Positions 1-37,189 of a stretch of DNA of 64,000 nt are shown in pieces; the first letter of the stretch is position 1; the number at the start of each line of letters is the position of its first letter. Below the pieces are notes generated by a model. The model saw only the letters and a list, made by a program, of their open reading frames with translations. It had not been told where the DNA came from and did no database searches. Source of the stretch: Octopus sinensis (lineage: Eukaryota); contig NC_042999.1 in assembly GCF_006345805.1 (NCBI RefSeq), positions 170,438,001 to 170,502,000 on the forward strand. The letters run 5' to 3'. Made by a program: the position numbers and the translations under genes.

Positions 1-1243
1 CTCCACTTGGAGGTCCGGACCAAACCAGACCCCGAGCAATCAAACCGGGCCGTCGGTCCAGCGTCCCACGACGGAGGCGCTGGTGTGGACGGCATGGGCT
101 TGCTTCTCCAGGTGCCTAGTCGCAAGCCCACTGACTTTTCCCGGTTGATTTTCGCTCCTGTCACCGCTTCGTAGTTTTCAGTGTCTCGCCGACCAGATCG
201 ATGTGCTCGTGGCTAGACACTATGACGGTGACGTTCGTCCGCGTATGCAGACACGCTCGTCCCGCATCCCAATTCTCGCGGGATGCCCCTTAGAGTCGCC
301 AGCTTCCGCAGTAGTGGCTCAAGAGTCAATACGTATAGAAGCGCGAGAGGGGGGCATCCCTGATGGACCGAACGTGCAATGTCGAAAGGTCTCGATAGAT
401 GTCCATTTACGCGAATTACCGAACGGATGCCTCTGTACAAGGCAGCTATCCAGCCGCGGAAGACGGGACCGAAACCGCCGCTCTCAGGACGCCTCCAAGT
501 ATCGATGGTCTACCCTATCAAGGCTTTTGATTGATCCAAGTTGATCAGGGCCCCACCCATGCCAGGTTCGTTAACTACCCTGTCTATGATGTAGCGCATC
601 AGATGGAGGTTGTCATGGATGGTCCGGCCTGGCACGGCGCATGTTTGCGCCTTGTCGACCAGTTTCTCGATGACAAGCGCCAACCTCTTGGCTAGCACCT
701 TGGCCAAAATTTTCAAGTCTGCATTAAGCAGAGTGATGGGCCTAAAGTTATCTATTACATTTCCCTTGTTTAGATCTTTCTTCAGCAGTGTTACGGCTCC
801 TCGGCTCACAAAACCAGGAATGCTCCCGTTTTGCTGCCAGTTGCAGTACACCGCCGCCAAGAGATCTCCAAACAAGTCTGGCATACAATTGTAAAGCTCG
901 TAGGGTAGACCATCCAAACCCGGTGATTTGTCCCTCGAGCATTCTGCCATCGCTTCCCGCACTTCCGCCGCCGTGATGGCACCTTCGCAGCACCCTGCCT
1001 TTCTTGTCGAGAGTCGTGGTAGGCTATGTAGGTAGGCACTGAAGTCCACCCTACGTTCTTGCCCTCCACTCGTTCCGAACAGTCGGGCAAAATGCTGCTG
1101 AAAGGCCTCACACATTTTACTTGGCTCGAGCAATTCGCGCCCCTGTTCATCTACCAGTGACCGAATGGTGGCTTTGTTGCCCTGTTGCGCCTCTGCCACC
1201 CGGGCCTCTCTCGCGGCTCCAACACCTTCGTTCCTTAGAGCAC
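1..1243 (-). mobile_element. L1/Tx1-type LINE ORF2 fragment (RT region), 5'-truncated, runs off the window start
   Basis: Translation gives KSPGLDGLPYELY, NFRPITLLNADLKILAKVLAKRL, INLDQSKA and a frameshifted SAYAD. Colinear with about 8640-9890. Homology stops at 1243 and is followed directly by (AGAT)5 at 1244-1263. Confidence 0.93.
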
Positions 1244-7261: not shown

Positions 7262-10200
7262 GTTTCTTTATTAGCCACACAGGGCTGCTCACAGACAGAA
7301 CAAATTACAAGGTAGAGCTTTTCTTTTGGGGGTAAAAAAAAAGGGGGGGTTGGTTTTCGATCAAAAGGGATCGTAAAAGGAAAGAAAGAGGACAAAAAAA
7401 AGGGGAGGATTTTAAAAAAAAAAGGGGGGAGAGGGAAGAAAAAAGGAAAGGGGAGAGGAAAAAAAGTTGATCAATAGGGATCGTAATCACAGAAATGTCA
7501 ATATGAAGTGTAAAGGGGAGGACAGGTGAGGATTACCCCTGGAAAGAAAAGCCTACGGAAAAGACCACGGTAACCTCGGTCAATGAAGTCACATGTTATA
7601 TTTCTTTCTTTTATTTTTTTTTTGCAAATAAGCAACTCTCTGTATTAATTTTTACGGTTCATAGAATCATAGTCAAGGTAGCTTCGTCATTCATACGTGC
7701 AATCCTTGCTACATTCACCCATCTTTTTTTACTAGACAAAACTTGCCTCTCTACTCTCACTTTCCTCTTCAAGTGATACTTGAAGAAGTTGATGAGAGAT
7801 TGACCAGAGAGGAAAGTGTTTGTCTCTAATCCTTTCAGGCGCGTCCACCAGATCCATTCTTCGCCATAGCCACAAGTATGATAAAAATAGCTCTTCCTCC
7901 CCGTTTGAAGGAAGGAGGCGTGACGATATTAACGATAGACTCGGCTGATAAACCGACACGTCCCACACGTGACAGCAGTCGTTCGACATAAGCCCACAGG
8001 TCGGAAATTGCTGGACACTGCACGATTGCGTGCAGAGCGGTTTCGTCGCTCTGCCGCATCTCGGGCAAATCGGCCCCGTGTTTCTCGAGCCATGCTATAG
8101 AGCTTATCCCGAACGGGTAGCGCTTCTCGGTAGCACCGCCAGGCCAGGGATCTCTGGAAGTTGTCCATAGGTCCCGGGCCGAAAGTCGTTTGAAACAGGC
8201 GGGTCAGGTATTCCTCGTCGACGCCCAGGTTTGCCCCGTGCTCGTCGTCGTACTTCCCCTCCACTAATCCCCTATAGAATGCTTTGGTTGTGTTGAAGTC
8301 ACTCAAGGTCGACCCGGGACGTCAGAGTTGCTTGAGAGCAACGCGACACTCGCGGTGCCATTCGCCCTTCCTCGGCCTCTTTTTGATCCACGACTGTAGT
8401 TCGGTCATGGAGACGAGTTGCCTGACCATCGGGACGCATCCTTTCCACAAGAAGCGGAAGAGAATGCGTTCTAGTTTGGTGATGGTAGGGTCGGGACAAG
8501 GTACGACGGTCAGGCGGTAGTAGATGACGGATGCGATGTACATGTTCGCCACCTCCGCCCGACCTTTTAGGGACAGTTTCCTCTCGGCCCATTGCTGGGC
8601 GAGAGTGACCACCCTACTCGTTATCTCGTTCCAGTTCTTCTCCATTTGGAGGTCCGGACCGAACCAGACCCCGAGCAACTCAACCGAGCCGTCTGTACAG
8701 CGTCCCACGACGGAGGTACTGGTGGATGGCATGGGCTTGCTTCTCCAGGTGCCGAGTCGCAAGCCCACTGACTTTTCCCGGTTGATTTTTGCTCCTGTCA
8801 CCGCTTCGTAGTCTTTCAGTGTCTCGCCGACCCGCCCGATGTGCTCGTGGCTTGACACTATGACGGTGACGTCGTCCGCGTATGCAGACACGCTCGTCCC
8901 GCATCCCAATTCTCGCGGGATGCTCCTCAAAGTCGCCAGCTTCCGCAGTAGTGGCTCAAGAGTCAATACGTATAGAAGCGCCGAGAGGGGAGAGGACATC
9001 CCTGACGGACCGAACGTGCAATGTCGAAAGGTCTCGATAGATGTCCATTTACGCGAATTACCGAACGGATGCCTCTGTACAAGGCAGTTATCCAGCCGCG
9101 GAAGACGGGACCGAACCAGCCGCTCTCAGGACTGCCTCCAAGTATCGATGGTCTACCCTATCGAAGGCTTTCGATTGATCCAAGTTGATCAGGGCCCCAC
9201 CCATGATAGGTTCGTTAACTACCCTGTCTATGATGTAGCGCGTCAAATGGAGGTTGTCATGGATGCTCCGGCTCGGCACAGCGCACGTTTGTGCGTTGTC
9301 GACCAGTTTCTCGATGACAAGCGCCAACCTCTTGGCTAACACCTTTGTCAAAATTTTCAGGTCTGCATTGAGCAGAGTGATTAGTCTAAAGTTATCTATA
9401 ATGTTCCCCTTGTTTGGATCTTTCTTCAGCAGTGTTACAGCTCCTTGACTCACAAAACCGGGTATGCTCCCGTTTTGCTGCCAGTTGCAGTATACCACTG
9501 CAAAGACGTCTCAAAAACAAGTCTGGCATACAATTGTTAAAACTCGTAGGGCAGACCATCCAAACTCGGCGATTTGTCTCTCAAGCATTCTGCCATCGCG
9601 TCCCGCACATCCGACGCCGTGATGGCACCTTCGCAGCACTCTACCTCTCTTGCCGAGAGTCGTGGTAGGCTGTGCAGGTAGGCACTGAAGTCCACCCTGC
9701 ATTCACGCTCACCACTCGTCCCGTACAGTCGGGCAAAGTGCCGCTGAAATGTCTCGCACATCTTGCTGGGCTCGGGCAATTCGCGCCCTTGTTCATCTAC
9801 CAGAGACCGAATGGGGGCTTTGTTGCCCTGCTGCGCCTCCGCCACCCGGGCCTCCTTCGCGGCTCCAACACCTTCCATCCTTAGAGCACGCATCCTAGCC
9901 CTGACAGCACACCCTTCGTGTTTGGCGTTGAAGTGTTGGTCAAGGGCCAACCTTGCTGCCAAAACGTCGGGTGTGATGCCGCTTCTTATTGCCTCTTCTA
10001 ACTTCTTAACTAACTCACCCTCTACTCTATTTCTATCTACGGCTAGTGCCTTGCTATATCTTATTGCTTCCGCTTTTACTGCTCTCTTGAGGGCGAACCA
10101 CCATTTGTTGTTGACAATGGCTCTCGTTAAAGCCCTTTTTACTAACGTGTTGATTCTGTCTCTGAAAACTTGTCTGGACGGGAATGATGCGTTCAGTTTC

Positions 10201-10941
10201 CAGTAACCAGGACCCTGTCTATGTGCCTTATCTAAGACTAGCGTACACGTCACGAATTTATGATCCGTGTAGCTGACTGTGTGGAATTGTGAACATCCTA
10301 AGTTATCCTTGTCTACTGTCCTACACAGTATCCTATCTAGATACGATCTCGACGACCCACTGCGGTTGCTCCATGTCCACGTTGGTGCATTTGGGTGGTC
10401 GAGTCGGTACCTGTCAGACAGTTGGAATCGTCTGAGCAGGTCTCTGAGGCATTTGCATCCCCTTCTGTTTTTGTCTCTCCCCACATAGTCTAGATGCGTG
10501 TCCAAGGTAGCATTCCAATCCCCCACTAAAAGTAAAGGACGAGACGTTCCCAGGAATACTTCTAGACGTCGAAAGAAATCGGCCGACTGTTTAAAGGCGG
10601 TGCGTAGACTGATACGAGTCGAAAGGCGCACCCATTGCTGCCGTCGACATCCAGAACGACCAGTCTACCCTCCGGGTCTACGAATATCGTCTTGACTTCG
10701 AGATCCAGGCTCCTGTGAAAAAGTACCGTGGTGCACAACTACGCCCATCCTCGGCAGACAAGGAGCAAAATAAATGTTAAACTGCCGCCAAACATGGACT
10801 GGACTTAGGCCCGTGGCTCGTGGAGTCTGGTCTCACTTATGGCTATGATTCCCAAATCGTGTGACTTGATGTCATTTAGGAGGTATCCTTGTTTCCAAGG
10901 AGACCCCAAGCCACGCGCATTCACACACCAATCTTGACCAT
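7262..10941 (-). mobile_element. L1/Tx1-type LINE: complete but disrupted ORF2 plus 3'UTR
   Basis: The 3'UTR (about 7262-7658) ends in AATAAA followed by (TCTA)n on the minus strand. ORF2 domains are described in the next feature. Confidence 0.95.
7659..10941 (-). pseudogene. ORF2 polyprotein (APE endonuclease, reverse transcriptase, C-terminal Cys/His region), frameshifted
   Basis: ATG at 10941, then MVKIG.(V)NARGL, IIAISETRL, LLLVGDWNA, SRSYLDRI, YTDHK, GPGYWKLN (APE). RT motifs are INLDQSKAFDRVDH and SAYADDVTV. C-terminus has ETALHAIVQCP. ORF-track pieces: 9537-10631, 9088-9498, 8322-8999, 7929-8306, 7835-8068. Confidence 0.93.
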
Positions 10942-22134: not shown

Positions 22135-22989
22135 ATTTGTATACATTTGTATTATAATGCGTACACACAACACACATATATATATAACGCGTGTATATGT
22201 ACTTATATATATTTAATGCGTATAGATATCGACGAGGAGATGCACAATGAAATACAAAAACATACCGAGGGACAACCCCTCGAAAATACACTAAATCATT
22301 GGAAGGAAACCTGTGAAAAGGAAGAGAGAAATTCTCTCCTGCGCTGGCAAAAAAGCAACAATTTCTTCCAAAGATATGCGTCAATTTTCAAAAATGAATT
22401 GGGTACAGATAATCCCTTTCTTAAGAAAATTACAAAAAATTAAAAAGAACAACCGAACAACCCACAAACCACCCCCAACTATCCTCCATACACTAGAAAC
22501 AGAAATCACCCACAACCAACATTTTCGACCACGCAAGACTTAACAGGGAACATCTGACAGACAACGCATCTATGAAATAGATTACACACAAAAAACAGAA
22601 CACACCACAATATCCTATACCAACCCAACTACCCCATAACAGCACAAAACAACACTAGAATAAAAATACACCACACACCAGTCACTACTACCCCCCATGA
22701 CCCAAAATTACTGGTCCCCACCGAACACAAGACAAATACAAAATAACACTAAGTCAAGCAACATCCCACATACAAGCAATTCGAAACAAAAATATATCAC
22801 ATACAGAAATTTTACACACATCACTAACGAAAACAACCATAGATTCCCACACACACACAACAATCGGAGGCAATAATACCACCGTTCCCCCGAACCAATA
22901 TCATACAAACAGACAACTCATACAAACAAAATTACACCCAACATTTTTTAGCCCGGGACCAGAGACACCAGGACACAGGCTGGAACCTA

Positions 22990-24480
22990 GTAATAAGGAA
23001 AAACCAAAGATAATCAACCTTTCAACCAAACCTCTCTCTAACATAAAAATTGACATCCTCTCAAAAGGGCTCAAATTTACGCCAACTCCACCCAGAGCCA
23101 ACCTAAATGAAATCAAGGATAATATAACAGAATTTTGCAGAAAATTAAGACTAGCAGAAGCATCAACCAGTTTCAATACTGAAGATGACTCACTAGTCAA
23201 GAACAAAAGTGAACACATCCCCCACAGAGGAAGAAATAAAGATCTTGACGAATTCTGTAACCACATTGAGAATTTTCCCTACCATACTATACATATACAG
23301 ACAGTTAACTCAAATTTTAACACTACACAATGGAAGGAACTGATAGAACTCCAAAATGATGAAGATATAACCATTAAGGAAGCAGACAAGGGAAGTGCAG
23401 TTGTAATAATGGATACATCATACTATAGAAATCTTGTAACTTCCTTGCTTGATGACAACCAACATTATGAAAAAATCACCAACTACACCCCACAAAAAAT
23501 AATGAAAACTCTATCTTCATTAATTAAAACCCATGAAAAGGAACTAACAACCAAAGAGATTGACTTTCTAACAAACTTTAAATGCAAGCCTAGCCTCTTC
23601 TATGGTCTGCCAAAAATTCATAAAAGCCAAATTATAAATGAAACCATTAAAAAATCACCAGACATACATACACACACCTAACCCGGGGGACCTAAAACTA
23701 CGACCCATTGTAGCTGGCCCAACCTGTGAAACAAACAGATTAAGTCTATTTATGGACATCCTCCTGAAACCCTTCCTTAAACATATCGATAGCCATATCA
23801 GAGATGACTTGGATATGTTAAACCACCTTCCAAAAAAAGCCAAGGAAGAAACAATCATGGTTTCATTTAATGTAGTTAATTTATATACCAGTATACCTCA
23901 TAATTATGGACTAGAGGCAATACAGTTCTGGCTTGACCATTTTCCGGTAGAAATACCAAAAAGGATCAGTAAAAATTCATTACTAAATCGGTTGAATTCA
24001 TCCTACATAATAACCACTTCGTGTTTGACAATACATTTTACCGTCAAAAATCCGGAATGCTATGGTATAAGGGCAGCACCAGTCATTGCGAACCCACCAA
24101 TGGGCTACCTGGAAATAATCATTTACCAGGAATCTTTATCAACCTTTGGAAACCCCCCTCTCTCAATACATAAAGAGAATTGGAAACGATTCCTGGACGA
24201 TTGTTTTATACTCTGGAATGAAAACACAGATAAACTCCTAAAATTCAAAAACTATTGAACAGCATCAACCCAAATATACAGTTCACAATGGAATACAACC
24301 AAAAGGAGCTCGCGTTCTTAGATATACTAATTAAAAAAATTAACCTTAAAATAGAAACAGACATTTTTACAAAGCCACAGACGCCAAACAATACCTACTT
24401 TTTGATTCATGCCACCCAAGACACACTAAAACACAAACATCCCTTTCAACCTTGCAAGAAGGATATGCACAATAGTGTCT
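22990..24480 (+). pseudogene. PLE reverse transcriptase (frameshifted)
   Basis: ILSKGLKFTP, IKEADKGSAVVIMD, FYGLPKIHK, LRPIVAG, SFNVVNLYTSIP, WKRFLDDCFILW, NIQFTME, LAFLDILI. Confidence 0.93.
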
Positions 24481-24849
24481 GAACAAAATACCAAGAACTT
24501 TAGACTACAAGAACTCAAAAACCACCCTAATTGACAGACACTACCCAGCTCAACTCATAGAGGATGGGATCAGACGTGCACAGAAATCGACATAGAAACT
24601 TTGAGAAAAGTTCAACACAACAACACACCTCCCCGAAAATACTACTACCTTATATCTACATACAACCCCAGAAACAAAGAAGCCTTCACCATCATCACCC
24701 AGAATTTACCAATACTTCATAAGGACCCCAAATTAAAGGAAATTCTAAACATACATAAAATCATTAAAAGCTACAAACAACCTAAATCACTTAAAAAGAT
24801 TCTCACAAAGGCAAAATTGCTTTCTGAAATTACGGATGCAAAAGTAAAA

Positions 24850-25278
24850 AAATGTGGTAGACCAAACTGTGCAACATGCCCAAACCTTCTAGAAGGATCA
24901 GAATTCCTCTTCAAAGAGGGACAAAAATTCAAGATCAAATCTAATTTTACTTGTGCCTCTGAAAACATAATTTATGTCATAAGATGCTCGGGCTGCCACC
25001 AAAACTACGTGGGGTCCACGGGACTATCACTCAGACGTAGATGCACACTGCATTGACAACAGATTGCATTCCCAGAATACAGAATGATACCCTTTAGTGA
25101 GCATATTGAGAAATGCGCAAAGCAACTACTACCACAATTTTTAATCTTTCCATTTTATCAATGTGCTATTGGAACACCAACACAAATTAGACTAAACAAG
25201 GAAACATTCTTCATTGAAAAATATAAGCCCAAACTTAACCACTCTAACATTCTTATACAGAGAAACTCACCCCATTAA
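24850..25278 (+). pseudogene. Cys linker plus GIY-YIG endonuclease of the PLE
   Basis: KCGRPNCATCP (CX4CX2C linker), NIIYVIRCSGCHQNYVGSTG, and C-terminal ETFFIEKYKPKLN. Confidence 0.9.
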
Positions 25279-25444: not shown

Positions 25445-25570
25445 CTATGTCACTGTATGAAAAAAATTTATAACATTCTTCTGACATAATGACTCAAATA
25501 TATTTTTTTTAACCTTTTAAAACAAGCCTTCTGTAGTTTTTTCACTTCTTACTATTTTCTATATATATTA

Positions 25571-25988
25571 CTCTTTTACTCTTTTACTCTTTTACTTGTT
25601 TCAGTCATTTTGACTGCGGCCATGCTAGAGTACCGCCTTTAGTCGATCAAATCGACCCCGGGACTTATTCTTTGTAAGCCTAGTACTTATTCTATCGGTC
25701 TCTTTTGCCGAACCGCTAAGTGACGGGGACGTAAACACACTAGCATCGGTTGTCAAGCAATGCTAGGGGGACAAACACAGACACACAAACACACACACAT
25801 ATATATATATATATATACATATATACGACAGGTTTCTTTCAGTTTCCGTCTACCAAATCCACTCACAAGGCATTGGTCGGCCCGGGGCTATAGCAGAAAA
25901 CACTTTCCCAAGATGCCACGCAGTCGAACTGAACCCGGAACCATGTGGTTGGTTAGCAAGCTACTTACCACACAGCCACTCCTGCGCC
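25571..25988 (-). mobile_element. tRNA-headed SINE, family A, full-length uninterrupted copy
   Basis: Head ggcgcaggagtggctgtgtggtaagtagcttgc...ggttccgggttcagt, a CORE-like segment (cttgggaaagtg), an internal microsatellite and a (agtaaaag)n tail. Confidence 0.9.
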
Positions 25989-26019
25989 TATTCAAAATAC
26001 TGAAATATATATATATATA

Positions 26020-32618: not shown

Positions 32619-33046
32619 TACTCTTTTACTCTCTTTTACTTGTTTCAGCCATTTGACTGTGGCCATGCTGGAGCACCGCCTTTAGTCGAACAAATCGACC
32701 CCAGGACTTATTCTTTGTAAGCCTATTACTTATTCTATCGGTCTCTTTTGCCGAACCGCTAAGTTACGGGGACGTAAACACACCAGCATCGGTTGTTAAG
32801 CGATGTTGGGGAGACAAACAGACACACAAACACACACACACACACACACACCACACACACACACATACACACACATACATACATATATATATATATGTAT
32901 TTATACGACGGGCTTCTTTCAGTTTCCGTCTACCAAATCCACTCACAAGGCTTTGGTCACCCCGATGCTATAGTAGAGGACATTTGTCCAAGGTGCGACG
33001 CAATGGGATTGAACCCAGAACTATGTGGTTCGTAGGCAAGCTACTT
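32619..33046 (-). mobile_element. SINE family A body, interrupted in its head; continues at 36805-36837
   Basis: Same family as 25571-25988 up to GCAAGCTACTT. The remaining head accacacagccactcctgcgcc is found at 36816-36837. Confidence 0.93.
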
Positions 33047-34702
33047 TTTATTTCATAAAATTTGTCATATAGACAGTACAAAGATTGTGCAGCTTTGCGG
33101 GCTGGACAAACACATTAATGAATGAAATTGAAATAGAATGAATAAATGAGAGACGAAACCCAACACCCACCGATTGGATTTTCTCGAAAACATATTTTGG
33201 ATTTTTGCTGAGTGAATTGTTTTCCTTTTTCCGTCTACCCTTCCAGGTTTCATCCTGTGTAATCAGTCTTTTGAAAAATTTTGACCCTTCCCGAAGTTGT
33301 GCCACCCACAGTGGAAGAATCCACTGTGGGTGGCACAACTTCGGGATATGAAGACGGCACATCGTCTCCCCGCTGAGATGACCCGTTCTTCTTCCTTCTT
33401 TTTTTCTTTTCTTCCTGATTTCGGGAGAGTGGAGCTCTTCCGCTTTGTCCGGAGACTTTCCCCCGCCTCCCGAAGCCTTAGGCTCCTTCGGCGGACAACT
33501 ATTGTTGCCCGCCTTCTTTCTTTTTAATCCTTTTTAAGTTGAGGAGGCTGAAGCCTCCTCGACCACATCCACCTCTCCCTTTGACCGGGTAGGGGAGGTG
33601 GCATCTAGTGATTGTTCCAGGCCCTTACCATGGTCCTGGGGGCAGTTCCTTTTAATTTGGCCTGGCTGCAGGCACGAGTGACACTTGGGGGGACGTCCCT
33701 CAAGTATCACCGGATACCTGCAGCCAGCCAGTTTCAAGAAATCTGGAAAAACCAGATCTGTTGCGGCTGATGGGGTCCACAGGGTCAAAATCGCTTTTGA
33801 CACTTCCCAATCGACCGCCGGCAATACCCTTACATTTAAGAGCCTGGGCCCGCCATCCCCCAGTCCCCGTCGGATGGTATCTTCAATCCAATCCGCTTCG
33901 GTGCCTGGGGGTAACCCACATACCCAGGCTCATATTAATTTTCTTCCACAATATTACGGAAGGAACAGAATTTCCTTGCCTTCTAAAGGCTGACTCGCAA
34001 ACTGGCGAGCCTTTTCCCCGTTGTCAAACAGCAACCATACGGTTGCATGTTTGACACCACGGGACATATATATTTTAAAGAGGACAAATATTCTTTAAGT
34101 TCATTTTTTATGACTTGTTTTGGGAAGACGGTGATGGAAATAAAGAACTTTAGAATAAGTTCTAAGTACCATCGTCTTCTCCTCCATATCTTTTAACCAC
34201 TGCTTAGGCGGGTTAATTTCCCACTCTAAGACAGAGTTTTTCTTTTTAAGTTCCTTCTCTGCCATGTCAAAAAACAGTTCAAAAGATAGTCTGCCAAAAA
34301 ATTAAACCGAATAAAGAATAAAACAAAATAAAAGTGGAGGGGAGGAAAGTGAAATTAAAGTAATGAAAAGAATAAACCAAAATTTAGAAAGAAAGAAAAA
34401 ATAGAAGGGAAAAGTAAAAGAAAAACCTCACAAATATCACAGACAGGGAATCCTTTGTATAATACTCCAAAAAGGTAATCCAAATGGCTTATTCGGAAAA
34501 ATTGTACTTTTTCTGGCGAGACACACCCACTAGAATTTACAAAAAGAATTTTCAAGCAAAAATTCTCAATTCACCATTACGGTGATGAGAATTGGCAATT
34601 TTTCTTTTTGTTCTTTTTTTCTATTCACGGAGCCGAAACTCACATCTTCTCACTGTAACAGTCCAAACCAACTAGTGTTGCATTCTGGGTAACCGGAAGT
34701 TA
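33047..34702 (-). mobile_element. ORF1-bearing retro-insertion A (rearranged 3' part)
   Basis: The minus-strand 5' end begins acttccgg next to the target motif. ORF1 from ATG 34265 is paralogous to copy C. The 3' end ATGAAATAAA abuts the target. Confidence 0.8.
33346..34265 (-). pseudogene. L1/Tx1-type ORF1 (gag-like, zinc knuckle), copy A, with stops and truncated
   Basis: MAEKELKKK..KQWLKDMEEKTMVLRTYS..ATVWLLF..GLPPGTEADWIEDTI..VILEGRPPKCHSCLQPGQIKRNCP (knuckle His changed to Gln). Confidence 0.85.
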
Positions 34703-34713
34703 GCAAGCTACTT

Positions 34714-34928
34714 TATTTCATAAAATTTGTCATATAGACAGTACAAAGATTGTGCAGCTTTGCAGGGCTGGACAAACACATTAATGGATGAAAATGAAAT
34801 AGAATGAATAAATGAGAGATGAAACCCAACACCCGCCGATTGGATTTTCTCGAAAACATATTTTCTTTTTTTAAAAATCAATATGAGGTTTCAAACCTCT
34901 TGCAAGAAGGAGGCACTAAAACCTCTTA
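34714..34928 (-). mobile_element. Short 5'-truncated retro-insertion B (3' end only)
   Basis: About 150 bp nearly identical to 33047-33198 (about 5 differences by eye). Bounded by GCAAGCTACTT (34703-34713) and CAAGCTACTT (34929-34938). Confidence 0.8.
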
Positions 34929-34938
34929 CAAGCTACTT

Positions 34939-36804
34939 TATTTCATTTAATTTGCACAAGGGCAGCACATAGATTTACAACAATTCTCCATGTCAGGTCC
35001 TTCAAGCAATGTGACTTGCCACCTGCAGACAACTCTGCAGCGACAAGTCGGGGCCTGCAAAGAGGAAAGCAAATTCTTTCTTGTCAAAGGTCGCTGTGAC
35101 CTTTGACAAAATATTTTCCATTACTACCTCCGCAGCCACTTGCGGAGGCCATATCGGACTACCAGGGTAGACCGAATACACACGTTCTCGGTCACCCAAG
35201 CCGTCCAAAGATTTATTCACCGTCCCTCCCTCGTGGTAAAGGAGAAACACCTCCTCTTCACAGGAAGGGATCTCACACTGCTCCGTCAGTGGCACACTTC
35301 CCAGGAACATCCGCTGACCGTCCTCTGCTCCTCTTTTTCCTCTTTCTTTCTGAGGCTGAGGGAGCAGGGGGCTGCGTCGACAGACGCGGGGGGTCGCTAC
35401 CCTCCTCCGCGCCTGAACATTCTTTGGTGAGCAACCATTGTTACTCACCTTTCTTTTTCTTTTCGTGGAGGCAACTTCTTCCACGACTTCCACCGTCTCC
35501 CCCTCCAATGAGGGGGCGGCGGGCAGCTTCTCTTTCTCATGCTCCAAGGCCTTGCCACGGCCCTTGGTACAGTTTTTCCTGATATGGCCGGGCTCCAGGC
35601 ACAGGTGACACTTGGGGGGGCGTCCCTCAAGTATCACTGGGTACCTGTACCCGGCCATATTTGGGAAGTCTGGAAATGCCATATCTCTCACGGCCACCGG
35701 GGTCCACAGGGTCAAAGTTGCCTTTGACCCCCTCCCAGTCGACCGCAGGAACAACATCCACACTCAATAGTCTGGGCCCGCTATCCCCCAGGCCTCGCCA
35801 GATGGTATCTTCGATCCATCCCGCCTCCGTGCCCGGGGGCAGCCCGCAGATCCAGGCTCTTCTTATCTTCCTCCCACAATACGTGGGGAGGAACAAAATT
35901 TCTTCCCCCTCAAGGGGCTCGCTGGCAAATTTGCCAGCTTCCTCGGGGGTACCAAACAGCAACCAGACCGTTGCAAATTTGGTGCCCCGTGAAATAAATT
36001 TTATAGTTGGCAAGTAGTCTGCCAACTCTCTCTCTCTCTCTCTCTCTATTATGCTCTTGTCGAAGAGGGTGATGGCACCACGCGACCTAGAATAGGTCCG
36101 TAGCACCACCGTCCTCTTCTCAAGATCTTTAATCCACTGTTTGGATGGGACCACCTCTCACTCCAAAGCAGCGACACCGTTTATTTTTGCCATGTGCAAA
36201 AAAGAAAGTCTTGAAAGTTCAAAGAAAGTTCAAAGGTCACAGAATAAGTCCAAAACTGGTACACAAAAGTTAACAGAAACAGTAAAAAATATAATAAAGA
36301 AAGTCCAAAAAATAATTAAACAGTTAAAAAAAAACAGGAAGGGTAGACGGAAAAAGGAAAACAATTCACTCAGCAAAAATCCAATTTCCTGGCCCACAGG
36401 TATTCCCGGTCAATCGTTTCTTCCCGTAAATGATAAAAGAACTCCAATAAATCCAAACACAAAACTGGCGACAGCGAACGGTAACTGCAACAGCAACTGT
36501 AACAGGTTCTAATCATTCGGCCGAGGACACGCCCCTCCACTGTTTTTTTAAAATGAATCCAAGAAATTCACAATAAATTCACAAAACAGCAGCCGCCGAG
36601 AGCAGGCGAAATTGTCCCAGCAATGGGCGAAATTTGTTAACAAAAAATTACAATATAACAAATTACACCCAGCTCAGATAAAACAAAATCACTTGCCTCG
36701 ACAACCTTCTCTGTTTTTGTTCTTTTTTCTTTTTAGGACGGATCTCAAAGCTCACGTCCTCACTGTTCACTGGCAAGAAGTCGACTTGATGCGCATGTGC
36801 GGAA
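34939..36804 (-). mobile_element. Complete ORF1-only (HAL1-like) non-autonomous retroelement, copy C
   Basis: About 610 nt 5'UTR, a single ORF1, about 60 nt 3'UTR ending in ATGAAATAAA, target motif on both sides, and no ORF2. Confidence 0.85.
35002..36193 (-). pseudogene. L1/Tx1-type ORF1 with CCHC zinc knuckle, copy C
   Basis: ATG at 36193 (MAKINGVAALE*EVVPSKQW), one TGA, one +1 frameshift in a G run at about 35730, an in-frame (GA)n expansion (ERERERE), CHLCLEPGHIRKNC, then a basic region and a C-terminal extension to the stop at 35002. Confidence 0.88.
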
Positions 36805-37189
36805 GCAAGCTACTTACCACACAGCCACTCCTGCGCCTATTATCTTTATGAATTATTTCAAAGTTCTCAAATGAATCGATTTGAAGTTCGCTATCCGACG
36901 TTGATAACTGCTTTTAACTTGGACATAAGGTTAGAAATTTCAAGGAGAAAGTTTAGTCGTTTATATTAGCCCTAGGGTGAGAGTGGTATTTTATTTTATC
37001 GTTCCCGGAGTGATGGAAAGGAAAACAGACTTCAGCGGGAACGGAACTCAAAACGTAAAGGACGGGCACAAACGAGGCTCGGTCGACGTTCTAATGGTTC
37101 TGCCAATCTAATGGCTCTGTCTGACAACAAAAGCTTAATAATGGTTTCAGATTTTTGCACAAGGCCATCAATTTCTGGGGAGATGGTCA

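What the first reader, a model, noticed from the sequence alone, without database searches (positions are those of the whole stretch)
32619..36837. Serial site-specific retrotransposition into the tRNA-like head of a SINE
Seen: a family A SINE is split at GCAAGCTACTT. The uninterrupted copy has one such motif (about 25955-25966), but here it occurs four times: 33036-33046, 34703-34713, 34929-34938 (CAAGCTACTT) and 36805-36815. The motifs separate three same-orientation inserts. Each insert has a 3' end reading ATGAAATAAA joined to the target on the minus strand, and the inserts come from at least two different sequence families. The site lies between the A-box-like and B-box-like motifs. Established: Tx1-clade elements target multicopy sequences (U2 snRNA, tRNA arrays, microsatellites), and regenerated target duplications permit tandem stacking. 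Inference: a retrotransposon lineage that uses an abundant SINE as its specific target, a parasite-of-parasite system that I do not recall being described. This is the strongest novelty candidate in the window.
Basis: partly seen in the sequence, partly recalled or inferred. Interest (0 to 1): 0.88.

Follow-up and report, generated by a model that had tools for sequence, protein, structure and literature searches.

The report
Retrotransposons stacked in an octopus SINE
Three dead copies of a small gag-only retrotransposon sit head-to-tail at exactly the same 11-base spot inside an abundant octopus SINE, a real but unsurprising new example of the known habit of Tx1-type LINEs to home in on one repeated sequence, here another mobile element.

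Summary
One SINE (minus strand) is split after ...GGTAAGTAGCTTGC. The 11-nt motif occurs four times in 3.8 kb and separates three same-orientation inserts of 1,866, 214 and about 1,652 bp. Each insert ends ...ATGAAATAA(A).

The two long inserts are decayed ORF1-only non-LTR elements: 5'UTR, an ORF with two RRM-like domains and a CCHC knuckle, a short tail, and no ORF2. Two further copies, found in Octopus sinensis by protein similarity alone, have the same 5' junction to a SINE head (chance about 2e-5 each).

Distant ORF1 relatives in four octopod genomes belong to full-length L1/Tx1-type LINEs (APE, RT, zf-RVT). These LINEs share ins3's 3'-tail motif. They also sit at fixed targets: (ATT)n, (ATCT)n, a MITE-like repeat, and short motifs regenerated between stacked copies.

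Serial target-specific retrotransposition with a regenerated 10-15 bp target duplication is therefore well supported.

Tx1-clade membership is only indirectly supported, because the inserts have no RT. The 3' junction to SINE body is seen only in this window.

The claim of an undescribed parasite-of-parasite system is overstated. Tx1-clade families already target piggyBac, Mariner, Harbinger and LTR elements, with tandem copies sandwiching a TSD. A SINE target appears unreported in the literature I could search. Verdict: new member of a known kind.

The parts
36805..36841 (-). 5' head of the interrupted SINE (AATAGGCGCAGGAGTGGCTGTGTGGTAAGTAGCTTGC). Its last 11 nt (36815-36805) are target copy 1.
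   Evidence: 38/38 identity to the intact SINE at 25956-25993. Non-SINE flank lies upstream.
34939..36804 (-). Insert 3: a 1,866-bp ORF1-only non-LTR element. 5'UTR 36804-36194 starts TTCCGCACATGCGC. Decayed ORF1 runs 36193-35002 (one stop, one frameshift), including a conserved post-knuckle segment. The tail ends ...GCTGCCCTTGTGCAAATTAAATGAAATAA.
   Evidence: 63% aa identity to O. sinensis P0001. No ORF2 remnant. Tail motif shared with octopod L1/Tx1-type LINEs.
34928..34938 (-). Target copy 2 (AAGTAGCTTGT, one mismatch), between ins3 and ins2.
34714..34927 (-). Insert 2: a 214-bp element. It has a unique 55-60 nt hairpin-forming 5' part and a 160-nt tail 95% identical to the tail of insert 1.
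34699..34713 (-). Target copy 3 (AAGTAGCTTGC) plus TAAC. Together they are one mismatch from the SINE consensus AAGTAGCTTGCTTAC, and are read as the upstream half of a 15-bp duplication made by insert 1.
33047..34698 (-). Insert 1: a ~1,652-bp ORF1-only element. 5'UTR starts TTCCGG. Decayed ORF1 is about 34265-33392 (four in-frame stops). The 3' region is a mosaic: palindrome 33289-33346, a 49-bp mariner fragment, and a 54-bp inverted copy of an ins3-type 5'UTR piece. A 160-nt tail follows, ending ...TTATGAAATAAAA.
33036..33046 (-). Target copy 4 (AAGTAGCTTGC), continuous with the SINE body.
32619..33035 (-). Remainder of the interrupted SINE: B-box-like region, body, (TA)n(TG)n microsatellite, 3' half and (TAAAAGAG)n-like tail.
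   Evidence: 80.5% identity to the intact copy at 25560-25995 and 88.6% to a copy in L002.
25560..25995 (-). Uninterrupted copy of the same SINE, serving as the empty-site reference. It has a single target motif at 25956-25966.

Best explanation
[quoted passage not shown] The copies here are non-autonomous, ORF1-only derivatives plus one short tail-only element. The site reads GGT^AAGTAGCTTGC^TTACC on the sense strand.

Shown: three elements are joined by their A-rich 3' end (...ATGAAATAA) to the same target nucleotide. All lie in the SINE's orientation, and each is bracketed by a 10-15 bp duplication of the target.

Shown: the duplication recreates the target on both sides, so later insertions entered the upstream copy. 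The order was ins1 first, with a 15-bp duplication whose TAAC remnant survives at 34699-34702, and then ins2 and ins3.

Inferred: the nick is made by the AP-type endonuclease of an autonomous L1/Tx1-type partner that is not in the window. Its reverse transcriptase recognises the shared 3' tail. The ORF1-only elements make their own RNA-binding ORF1p (two RRM-like domains plus a CCHC knuckle) and borrow ORF2p in trans.

Speculative: transcripts may start in the SINE head, so the head travels with some copies and helps form the 5' junction.
For: Motif statistics and junctions. The SINE is rebuilt exactly once the inserts are removed.

Independent copies L001 and L002 (O. sinensis) were picked only by ORF1 similarity. 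Both have SINE head ...TGC followed by TTCC...CATG(C/T)G. With 14 such heads in 344 kb, the chance of this for one element is about 2e-5.

The inserts are diverged from one another (73.6% identity, different 3' structures), so they are separate events.

The ORF1 product is RRM-RRM-CCHC.

Remote ORF1 relatives lie in full LINEs with APE, RT and zf-RVT, and their best PDB match is human L1 ORF2p.

Those LINEs are themselves target-specific and stack. Examples: (ATT)n on both sides in L034; (ATCT)n at window 7272 and L002 32243; a 19-nt motif regenerated between two 75%-identical units in L037; 5.3-kb arrays with a recurring junction motif in L040 and L041.

The ins3 tail core GCCCTTGTG...AAAT.AA matches their conserved tail (z=4.6, 2 of 500 shuffles). 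The ins1 and ins3 tails match over the last 38 nt (z=6.6).

L1-Tx1 families are annotated as recently active in O. vulgaris (PMC13282606).
Against: The 3' junction to SINE body is documented at one locus only. L001 is 3'-truncated, and L002's downstream flank is not SINE.

No copy with an ORF2 was found, so neither the endonuclease nor the clade is demonstrated for this family.

Only five elements at three loci could be examined. Genome-wide flanks could not be tabulated because no octopus genome was searchable by DNA.

All copies seen are dead, apart from the intact ORF1 of P0001.
Confidence: 0.75

Rival explanations
1. The 37-41 nt SINE head is part of the elements' own 5' terminus. It would have been acquired once by template switching onto SINE RNA, or by transcription from an upstream SINE, as with the U1/U2 heads on crocodilian Tx1 and SINEU. 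On this view the SINE association reflects ancestry rather than target choice.
For: L001 and L002 carry the head starting exactly at the SINE 5' end, but no SINE body follows within 10-29 kb. The head next to ins3 has 0/36 mismatches to the SINE consensus, against 26/325 in the body (p about 0.05). There is precedent in PMC4494074.
Against: ins1 and ins2 have no head, yet both are bracketed by the target. The ins1 3' end continues precisely into SINE body, with an 11-15 nt overlap with the head, and no second head is present. L001 and L002 say nothing about the 3' junction, because one is truncated and the other's 3' end is undefined. A carried head fits well as an addition to targeting but cannot replace it.
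Confidence: 0.12
2. The array arose from a single insertion, followed by unequal crossing-over, segmental duplication or gene conversion. Alternatively, it is an assembly artefact.
For: Repeated 11-mers and shared tails could mediate recombination or mis-assembly. The window does contain an N gap elsewhere (around 46.9 kb).
Against: ins1 and ins3 are only 73.6% identical and differ in UTRs and 3' structure. ins2 has a unique 5' part. The same junction recurs in another assembly. Equally heterogeneous stacks exist in L037 and L040, with units 75-77% identical.
Confidence: 0.04
3. The true target is a multicopy tRNA or other small-RNA gene containing AAGTAGCTTGC. SINE copies are hit only because their head derives from it.
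For: The head has A- and B-box-like motifs. Known relatives target small-RNA genes: Keno targets U2, Mutsu targets 5S, and Dewa targets a tRNA-Leu spacer (PMC3706591).
Against: All three occupied sites are SINE copies. Their heads begin at the SINE 5' end, and in the window the SINE body, microsatellite and tail follow. No tRNA gene was detected in the window, and the head is not scored as a tRNA.
Confidence: 0.07

Closest known systems
Tx1L in Tx1D (Xenopus laevis), founding member of the Tx1 clade
   Same: An APE-type LINE that inserts at one specific sequence inside another transposable element. The specificity resides in the endonuclease (Christensen et al. 2000, as cited in PMC4494074).
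   Different: That target is a non-autonomous piggyBac DNA transposon, not a SINE. Tx1L is autonomous and its nicking specificity was shown biochemically. Here only ORF1-only derivatives were seen and nothing is shown biochemically.
Tx1-Mar LINEs and SINEU-3 in Mariner-N4_AMi (crocodilians; Kojima 2015, PMC4494074)
   Same: A transposon serves as the target, with a ~16-bp TSD. Tandem insertions 'sandwich a TSD' through sequential insertion. Non-autonomous riders share the target, and small-RNA-derived heads sit at 5' ends.
   Different: That target is a Mariner DNA transposon, and the riders are short non-coding SINEU. Here the target is itself a retroposon (a SINE), and the riders keep a complete ORF1.
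Keno, Mutsu, Dewa, Kibi and Koshi (Tx1-clade target-specific families of fish and other animals)
   Same: Sequence-specific insertion into multicopy sequences. The octopod relatives found here at (ATT)n and (ATCT)n behave like Kibi and Koshi.
   Different: Those targets are U2 snRNA, 5S rRNA, a tRNA-Leu spacer and (TC)n/(TTC)n microsatellites, not a SINE.
HAL1 (half-L1) and other internally deleted non-autonomous LINEs
   Same: ORF1 is retained and ORF2 is lost, and amplification depends on ORF2p supplied in trans. Internally deleted non-autonomous LINEs, citing Bao and Jurka 2010 for L1, are mentioned in PMC4494074. That this citation is the half-L1 (HAL1) paper is from my own knowledge.
   Different: HAL1 is a mammalian L1 derivative without target specificity.
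R1/R2 of rDNA
   Same: A fixed target and possible dependence on co-transcription with the target. Upstream target sequence helps form the 5' junction (discussion in PMC4494074).
   Different: R2 uses a restriction-like endonuclease, and the target is a host gene. Co-transcription here is only a hypothesis.

Membership tests
Target-specific non-LTR retrotransposon (TPRT signature at a fixed site) | The 3' ends of independent copies are joined to the same target nucleotide in a fixed orientation. | tested here: met
   Three junctions...ATGAAATAA(A)|AGTAGCTTG, all in SINE orientation. All three are at one locus.
Target-specific non-LTR retrotransposon (TPRT signature at a fixed site) | A target-site duplication brackets each copy. 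| tested here: met
   A 10-11 bp duplication (AAGTAGCTTGC) brackets ins2 and ins3. About 15 bp (AAGTAGCTTGCTTAC, one mismatch in each half) brackets ins1.
Target-specific non-LTR retrotransposon (TPRT signature at a fixed site) | The same flanking target is found at independent genomic loci (criterion in PMC4494074: more than 20% of copies). | tested here: inconclusive
   The 5' flank is the SINE head at 3 of 3 loci (window, L001, L002). The 3' flank could be assessed only in the window. A genome-wide count was not possible.
Tx1 clade (L1 group) of LINEs | An ORF2 with an AP-endonuclease, an RT grouping with Tx1 in phylogeny, and a C-terminal CCHC. | not testable with these tools
   The inserts have no ORF2 (tblastn E>0.05). 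Distant relatives (L034, L037, L040-L042 and window 7272-10763) have Exo_endo_phos, RVT_1 and zf-RVT, with human L1 ORF2p as the best PDB match. No Tx1 reference set or RT tree was available.
Tx1 clade (L1 group) of LINEs | An ORF1p with RRM domain(s) followed by a CCHC knuckle. | tested here: met
   The AlphaFold model of P0001 has pLDDT 80-93 over residues 10-200. Foldseek top hits are tandem-RRM proteins (E 5e-5). The CCHC match is weak in Pfam. This architecture is not exclusive to Tx1.
Tx1 clade (L1 group) of LINEs | A 3' tail shared with an autonomous partner. | tested here: inconclusive
   The ins3 tail against the L034 LINE tail gives z=4.6 (2 of 500 shuffles). The core GCCCTTGTG...AAAT recurs at LINE 3' ends in L034 and L042. 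The ins1/ins2 tail matches only ins3, over 38 nt.
ORF1-only (HAL1-like) non-autonomous LINE | ORF1 is kept, ORF2 is absent, and several copies share the same architecture. | tested here: met
   ins3 (1.87 kb) and L002 (about 2.0 kb) share 5'UTR, ORF1, a conserved post-knuckle segment and a short tail. L001 shares the same up to its truncation. ins1 has ORF1 plus a mosaic 3' region.
tRNA-derived SINE (the target) | Many dispersed copies with a common 5' end, A- and B-box-like motifs and a defined tail. | tested here: met
   14 heads in 344 kb of octopod DNA, with aligned full copies.
tRNA-derived SINE (the target) | The head is recognisable as a tRNA. | tested here: not met
   ARAGORN found none. 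Rfam gave no tRNA match at E<=1.

The most novel reading that the evidence does not exclude
An octopod Tx1-like lineage has specialised on a SINE head as its landing pad, and may also use it as a transcription start or as 5' homology. This lineage is in turn exploited by ORF1-only and tail-only derivatives. That would make a three-tier chain of genomic parasites: riders on a LINE that lives inside a SINE that depends on yet another LINE. It would be the first LINE lineage whose dedicated target is a SINE.
Probability: 0.3. Interest if true: 0.6.

Novelty: new member of a known kind. Interest (0 to 1): 0.45.

Why it matters
It adds a retroposon (a SINE) to the list of sequences that Tx1-type LINEs can home to. 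It also suggests that octopod genomes host a radiation of target-specific L1/Tx1-type elements with several different targets: two microsatellites, a MITE-like repeat, short unique motifs and a SINE head.

That gives a natural series for studying how AP-endonuclease specificity changes. It also offers a compact, abundant and presumably harmless landing site, which is of interest for targeted-integration tools.

For genome annotation, it explains composite 'SINE-LINE-SINE' repeats and spurious gene models such as LOC115225585 in octopus assemblies.

Tried and rejected
1. Word-indexed protein searches with the ins3 ORF, a 3-sequence profile and a 13-sequence profile returned only P0001 (plus P0031). 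The last search was swamped by low-complexity words.

2. An exact look-up of a window ORF found nothing on record.

3. A metagenome scan for the 3' junction 18-mer gave 31 loci. None shares anything else with the SINE or the inserts, so these are chance hits.

4. By eye, the L002 3' flank looked like degraded SINE body. Local alignment against shuffles is at chance, so this was rejected. A sensitive search found no SINE body or element tail downstream of the L001 and L002 copies.

5. The idea that the head is younger than the body is only marginal, because divergence along this SINE is patchy.

6. Rfam and ARAGORN gave no tRNA call for the head, and no RNA family for the L037 target.

7. I looked for ORF2 remnants in all five SINE-associated elements and found none. 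The post-ORF1 conserved segment has no counterpart in the full-length relatives.

8. A broad regular expression for the tail core gives about the chance number of hits (19 against 16 expected). Only the extended pattern at LINE 3' ends is meaningful.

9. The LINE already in the window (7272-10763) was considered as the partner. It shares no nucleotide similarity with the inserts and ends at (ATCT)n, so it is a relative and not the partner.
Full report
**Observation.** The 11-mer GCAAGCTACTT occurs at 25956, 33036, 34703 and 36805, with a one-mismatch copy at 34928. That is five matches at <=1 mismatch in 64 kb against 0.91 expected, and no shuffle reached five.

Everything reads on the minus strand:
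- A 37-nt SINE head ends in ...GGTAAGTAGCTTGC (36841-36805).
- It is followed by insert 3 (36804-34939, 1,866 bp), AAGTAGCTTGT, insert 2 (34927-34714, 214 bp) and AAGTAGCTTGC.
- Next come four bases TAAC, insert 1 (34698-33047) and AAGTAGCTTGC.
- The rest of the SINE then follows (33035-32619).

Removing the inserts and the extra motif copies rebuilds one complete SINE, colinear with the uninterrupted copy at 25560-25995. Each insert ends ...ATGAAATAA(A).

**What the inserts are.**
- Inserts 1 and 3 share 73.6% identity over ~485 nt of coding sequence and differ elsewhere. Insert 2 shares only its last 160 nt (95%) with insert 1.
- Inserts 1 and 3 each carry a 5'UTR beginning TTCC, a decayed ORF of roughly 290-400 codons, and a short 3' region.
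- The only close protein among 5.8 billion clusters is an uncharacterised Octopus sinensis protein, P0001 (281 aa, 63% identity).
- Its AlphaFold model is confident over residues 10-200 and shows two alpha/beta domains. The best solved-structure matches are tandem-RRM proteins (NONO/SFPQ, hnRNP A1 UP1; E down to 5e-5). A CCHC knuckle and a disordered basic tail follow. This is an RNA-binding ORF1p-type protein.
- None of the five SINE-associated elements contains any endonuclease or RT remnant.
- ins3 and the L002 copy share the same ORF2-less architecture, including a conserved post-knuckle segment. They therefore amplified as ORF1-only non-autonomous elements.
- Insert 1's 3' region is a mosaic: a perfect 27-bp-stem palindrome, 49 bp of a mariner transposase gene also present at 38132-38180, and an inverted 54-bp piece of an ins3-type 5'UTR.

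**Independent copies.** P0001 and P0015 were retrieved purely by ORF1 similarity. P0015 is a chimeric gene model whose residues 83-127 are another ORF1 start. They led to two O. sinensis loci.
- In L001 the sequence reads ...ATAGGCTGAGGCATGGCTGTGTGGTAAGTAGCTTGC|TTCCTGTGCATGCG.
- In L002 it reads ...TAGGCGCAGGCGTTGCCGTGTGGTAAGAAGTTTGC|TTCCACTGCGCATGTGCG.
- In both, a SINE head starting at the SINE's own 5' end abuts the element at the same nucleotide and in the same orientation as in the window.
- There are 14 such heads in 344 kb of octopod DNA, so the chance of this for one element is about 2e-5.
- In the same sample, nine well-preserved heads and two diverged ones are uninterrupted.
- On the 3' side these two loci are uninformative. 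L001's element is truncated at ~1.5 kb. L002's 3' end cannot be defined, and its downstream flank is not SINE.
- The 3' junction into SINE body is thus documented only in the window.

**Order of events.** The SINE consensus reads ...AAGTAGCTTG(C/T)TTACCAACC. The TAAC before insert 1 and the CTAC after it are each one mismatch from TTAC. This fits a 15-bp duplication made by insert 1. Inserts 2 and 3 then entered the upstream copy, each with a 10-11 bp duplication. Because each integration regenerates the target on both sides, stacking is expected.

**Relatives and clade.** An exhaustive HMMER search with P0001 found 47 proteins. All those looked up come from octopods (O. sinensis, O. vulgaris, O. 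bimaculoides, Argonauta) or from unnamed assemblies. Apart from P0001 itself and P0015 (64% over 45 residues), identities are 22-36%. Their loci show what kind of element this ORF1 belongs to.
- In L034, ORF1 is followed by an ORF2 starting MANLRIGCLNVRGL. It has Exo_endo_phos, RVT_1 and zf-RVT domains. It is 70-77% identical in nucleotides to a LINE already in the window (7272-10763, minus strand), whose best PDB match is human L1 ORF2p.
- These LINEs are themselves target-bound. L034's copy lies in (ATT)n on both sides. The window's copy and another in L002 end against (ATCT)n.
- In L037, two full-length units only 75% identical are separated by the 19-nt motif that also precedes the first unit.
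- The L037 and L039 elements start after the same position of a palindromic MITE-like repeat.
- L040 and L041 carry 5.3-kb head-to-tail arrays with a recurring junction motif. Units are 77-99% identical.
- Their conserved 3' tail (...GCCC(C)TTGTGG.(A)AATAAA...) contains the core present near the end of ins3. Against L034's tail, z=4.6 with 2 of 500 shuffles; extended matches appear. The ins1 and ins3 tails match over their last 38 nt (z=6.6).
- A recent O. vulgaris repeat annotation lists 13 recently active L1-Tx1 families but does not analyse targets (PMC13282606).

**Mechanism.** The best-supported reading is target-primed reverse transcription by a sequence-specific AP-endonuclease LINE of the L1/Tx1 type. 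The first nick falls at GGT^AAGTAG on the antisense strand, and the second lies 10-15 bp downstream.
- The junctions, duplications, orientation and stacking are shown directly.
- The identity of the enzyme, trans-mobilisation of the ORF1-only elements and tail recognition are inferred.
- Whether transcripts start in the SINE head is open. If they do, the head would travel with the RNA, as with the U1/U2 heads of crocodilian Tx1 and SINEU. L001 and L002 hint at it.
- That idea cannot replace targeting, because inserts 1 and 2 have no head and insert 1 runs directly into SINE body.

**Comparison with known systems.**
- Tx1 of Xenopus inserts into the piggyBac-type transposon Tx1D.
- Crocodilian Tx1 families target Mariner-N4_AMi, Harbinger and LTR elements.
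- Other Tx1-clade families target U2, 5S, a tRNA-Leu spacer and microsatellites.

The architecture and the parasite-of-parasite logic are therefore established. What I could not find in the searchable literature is a SINE as the dedicated target. Repbase could not be consulted.

**Verdict.** Tx1-clade membership is plausible but not testable here. The novelty is that of a new member of a known kind, namely a new target class carried by ORF1-only riders. Interest is moderate.

Noticed in passing
window 7272-10763 (-) and 2-1219 (-): L1/Tx1-type LINE copies with APE, RT and a zf-RVT-type C-terminus, 70-77% identical to the O. sinensis LINE in L034. The longer copy ends ...CAGCCCTGTGTGGCTAATAAAGAAA directly against an (ATCT)n microsatellite. 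An independent copy in L002 (~32243) ends the same way, which suggests an (ATCT)n-specific family.
   Followed up: partly
L034 9716-15345: A full-length but decayed L1/Tx1-type LINE (ORF1 of 621 codons, then ORF2) embedded in an (ATT)n microsatellite on both sides.
   Followed up: partly
L037 9380-15412; L039 9327-9960; L038 9186-12054: A sister ORF1 lineage sits next to or inside a palindromic MITE-like repeat. The L037 and L039 elements start after the same position of that repeat. In L037, two full-length units only 75% identical are stacked, separated by a regenerated 19-nt motif, TTTTTCAAACAGCTGGTCG.
   Followed up: partly
L040 2.9-20.8 kb; L041 4.4-19.2 kb: Head-to-tail arrays of three or more full-length LINE units with a ~5.27-kb period. 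Units are 99% identical in O. vulgaris and 77-93% in O. sinensis. The junctions contain a recurring ...ACTGAATACTCGTCAT... motif.
   Followed up: partly
window 33183-33403: Insert 1's 3' region is a mosaic: a near-perfect palindrome (33289-33346, predicted hairpin -58 kcal/mol), a 49-bp fragment of the mariner-like transposase gene, and an inverted 54-bp copy of ins3 5'UTR (36331-36384). This suggests template switching or recombination in that lineage.
   Followed up: partly
window 37820-38473 (-): A mariner-like transposase ORF (218 codons without a stop). It is the source, or a relative of the source, of the 49-bp fragment inside insert 1.
   Followed up: no
window 32958-33035: The 78 nt of the interrupted SINE just 3' of the insertion site carry 12 mismatches to the family consensus. 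The next 57 nt carry none, and the 3' half about 7%. The cause is unknown; it could be a subfamily difference or error-prone repair at the integration site.
   Followed up: partly
window 22701-25053 (+): A series of long open frames from another retroelement-like sequence, with a possible C-terminal GIY-YIG-type region. It was not analysed.
   Followed up: no
L001 10001-10846; L002 10001-36638: The RefSeq gene models LOC115225585 (P0001) and 'K02A2.6-like' (P0015) are transposon ORFs. The second is a chimera of this ORF1 start with a retroviral-type integrase exon.
   Followed up: partly
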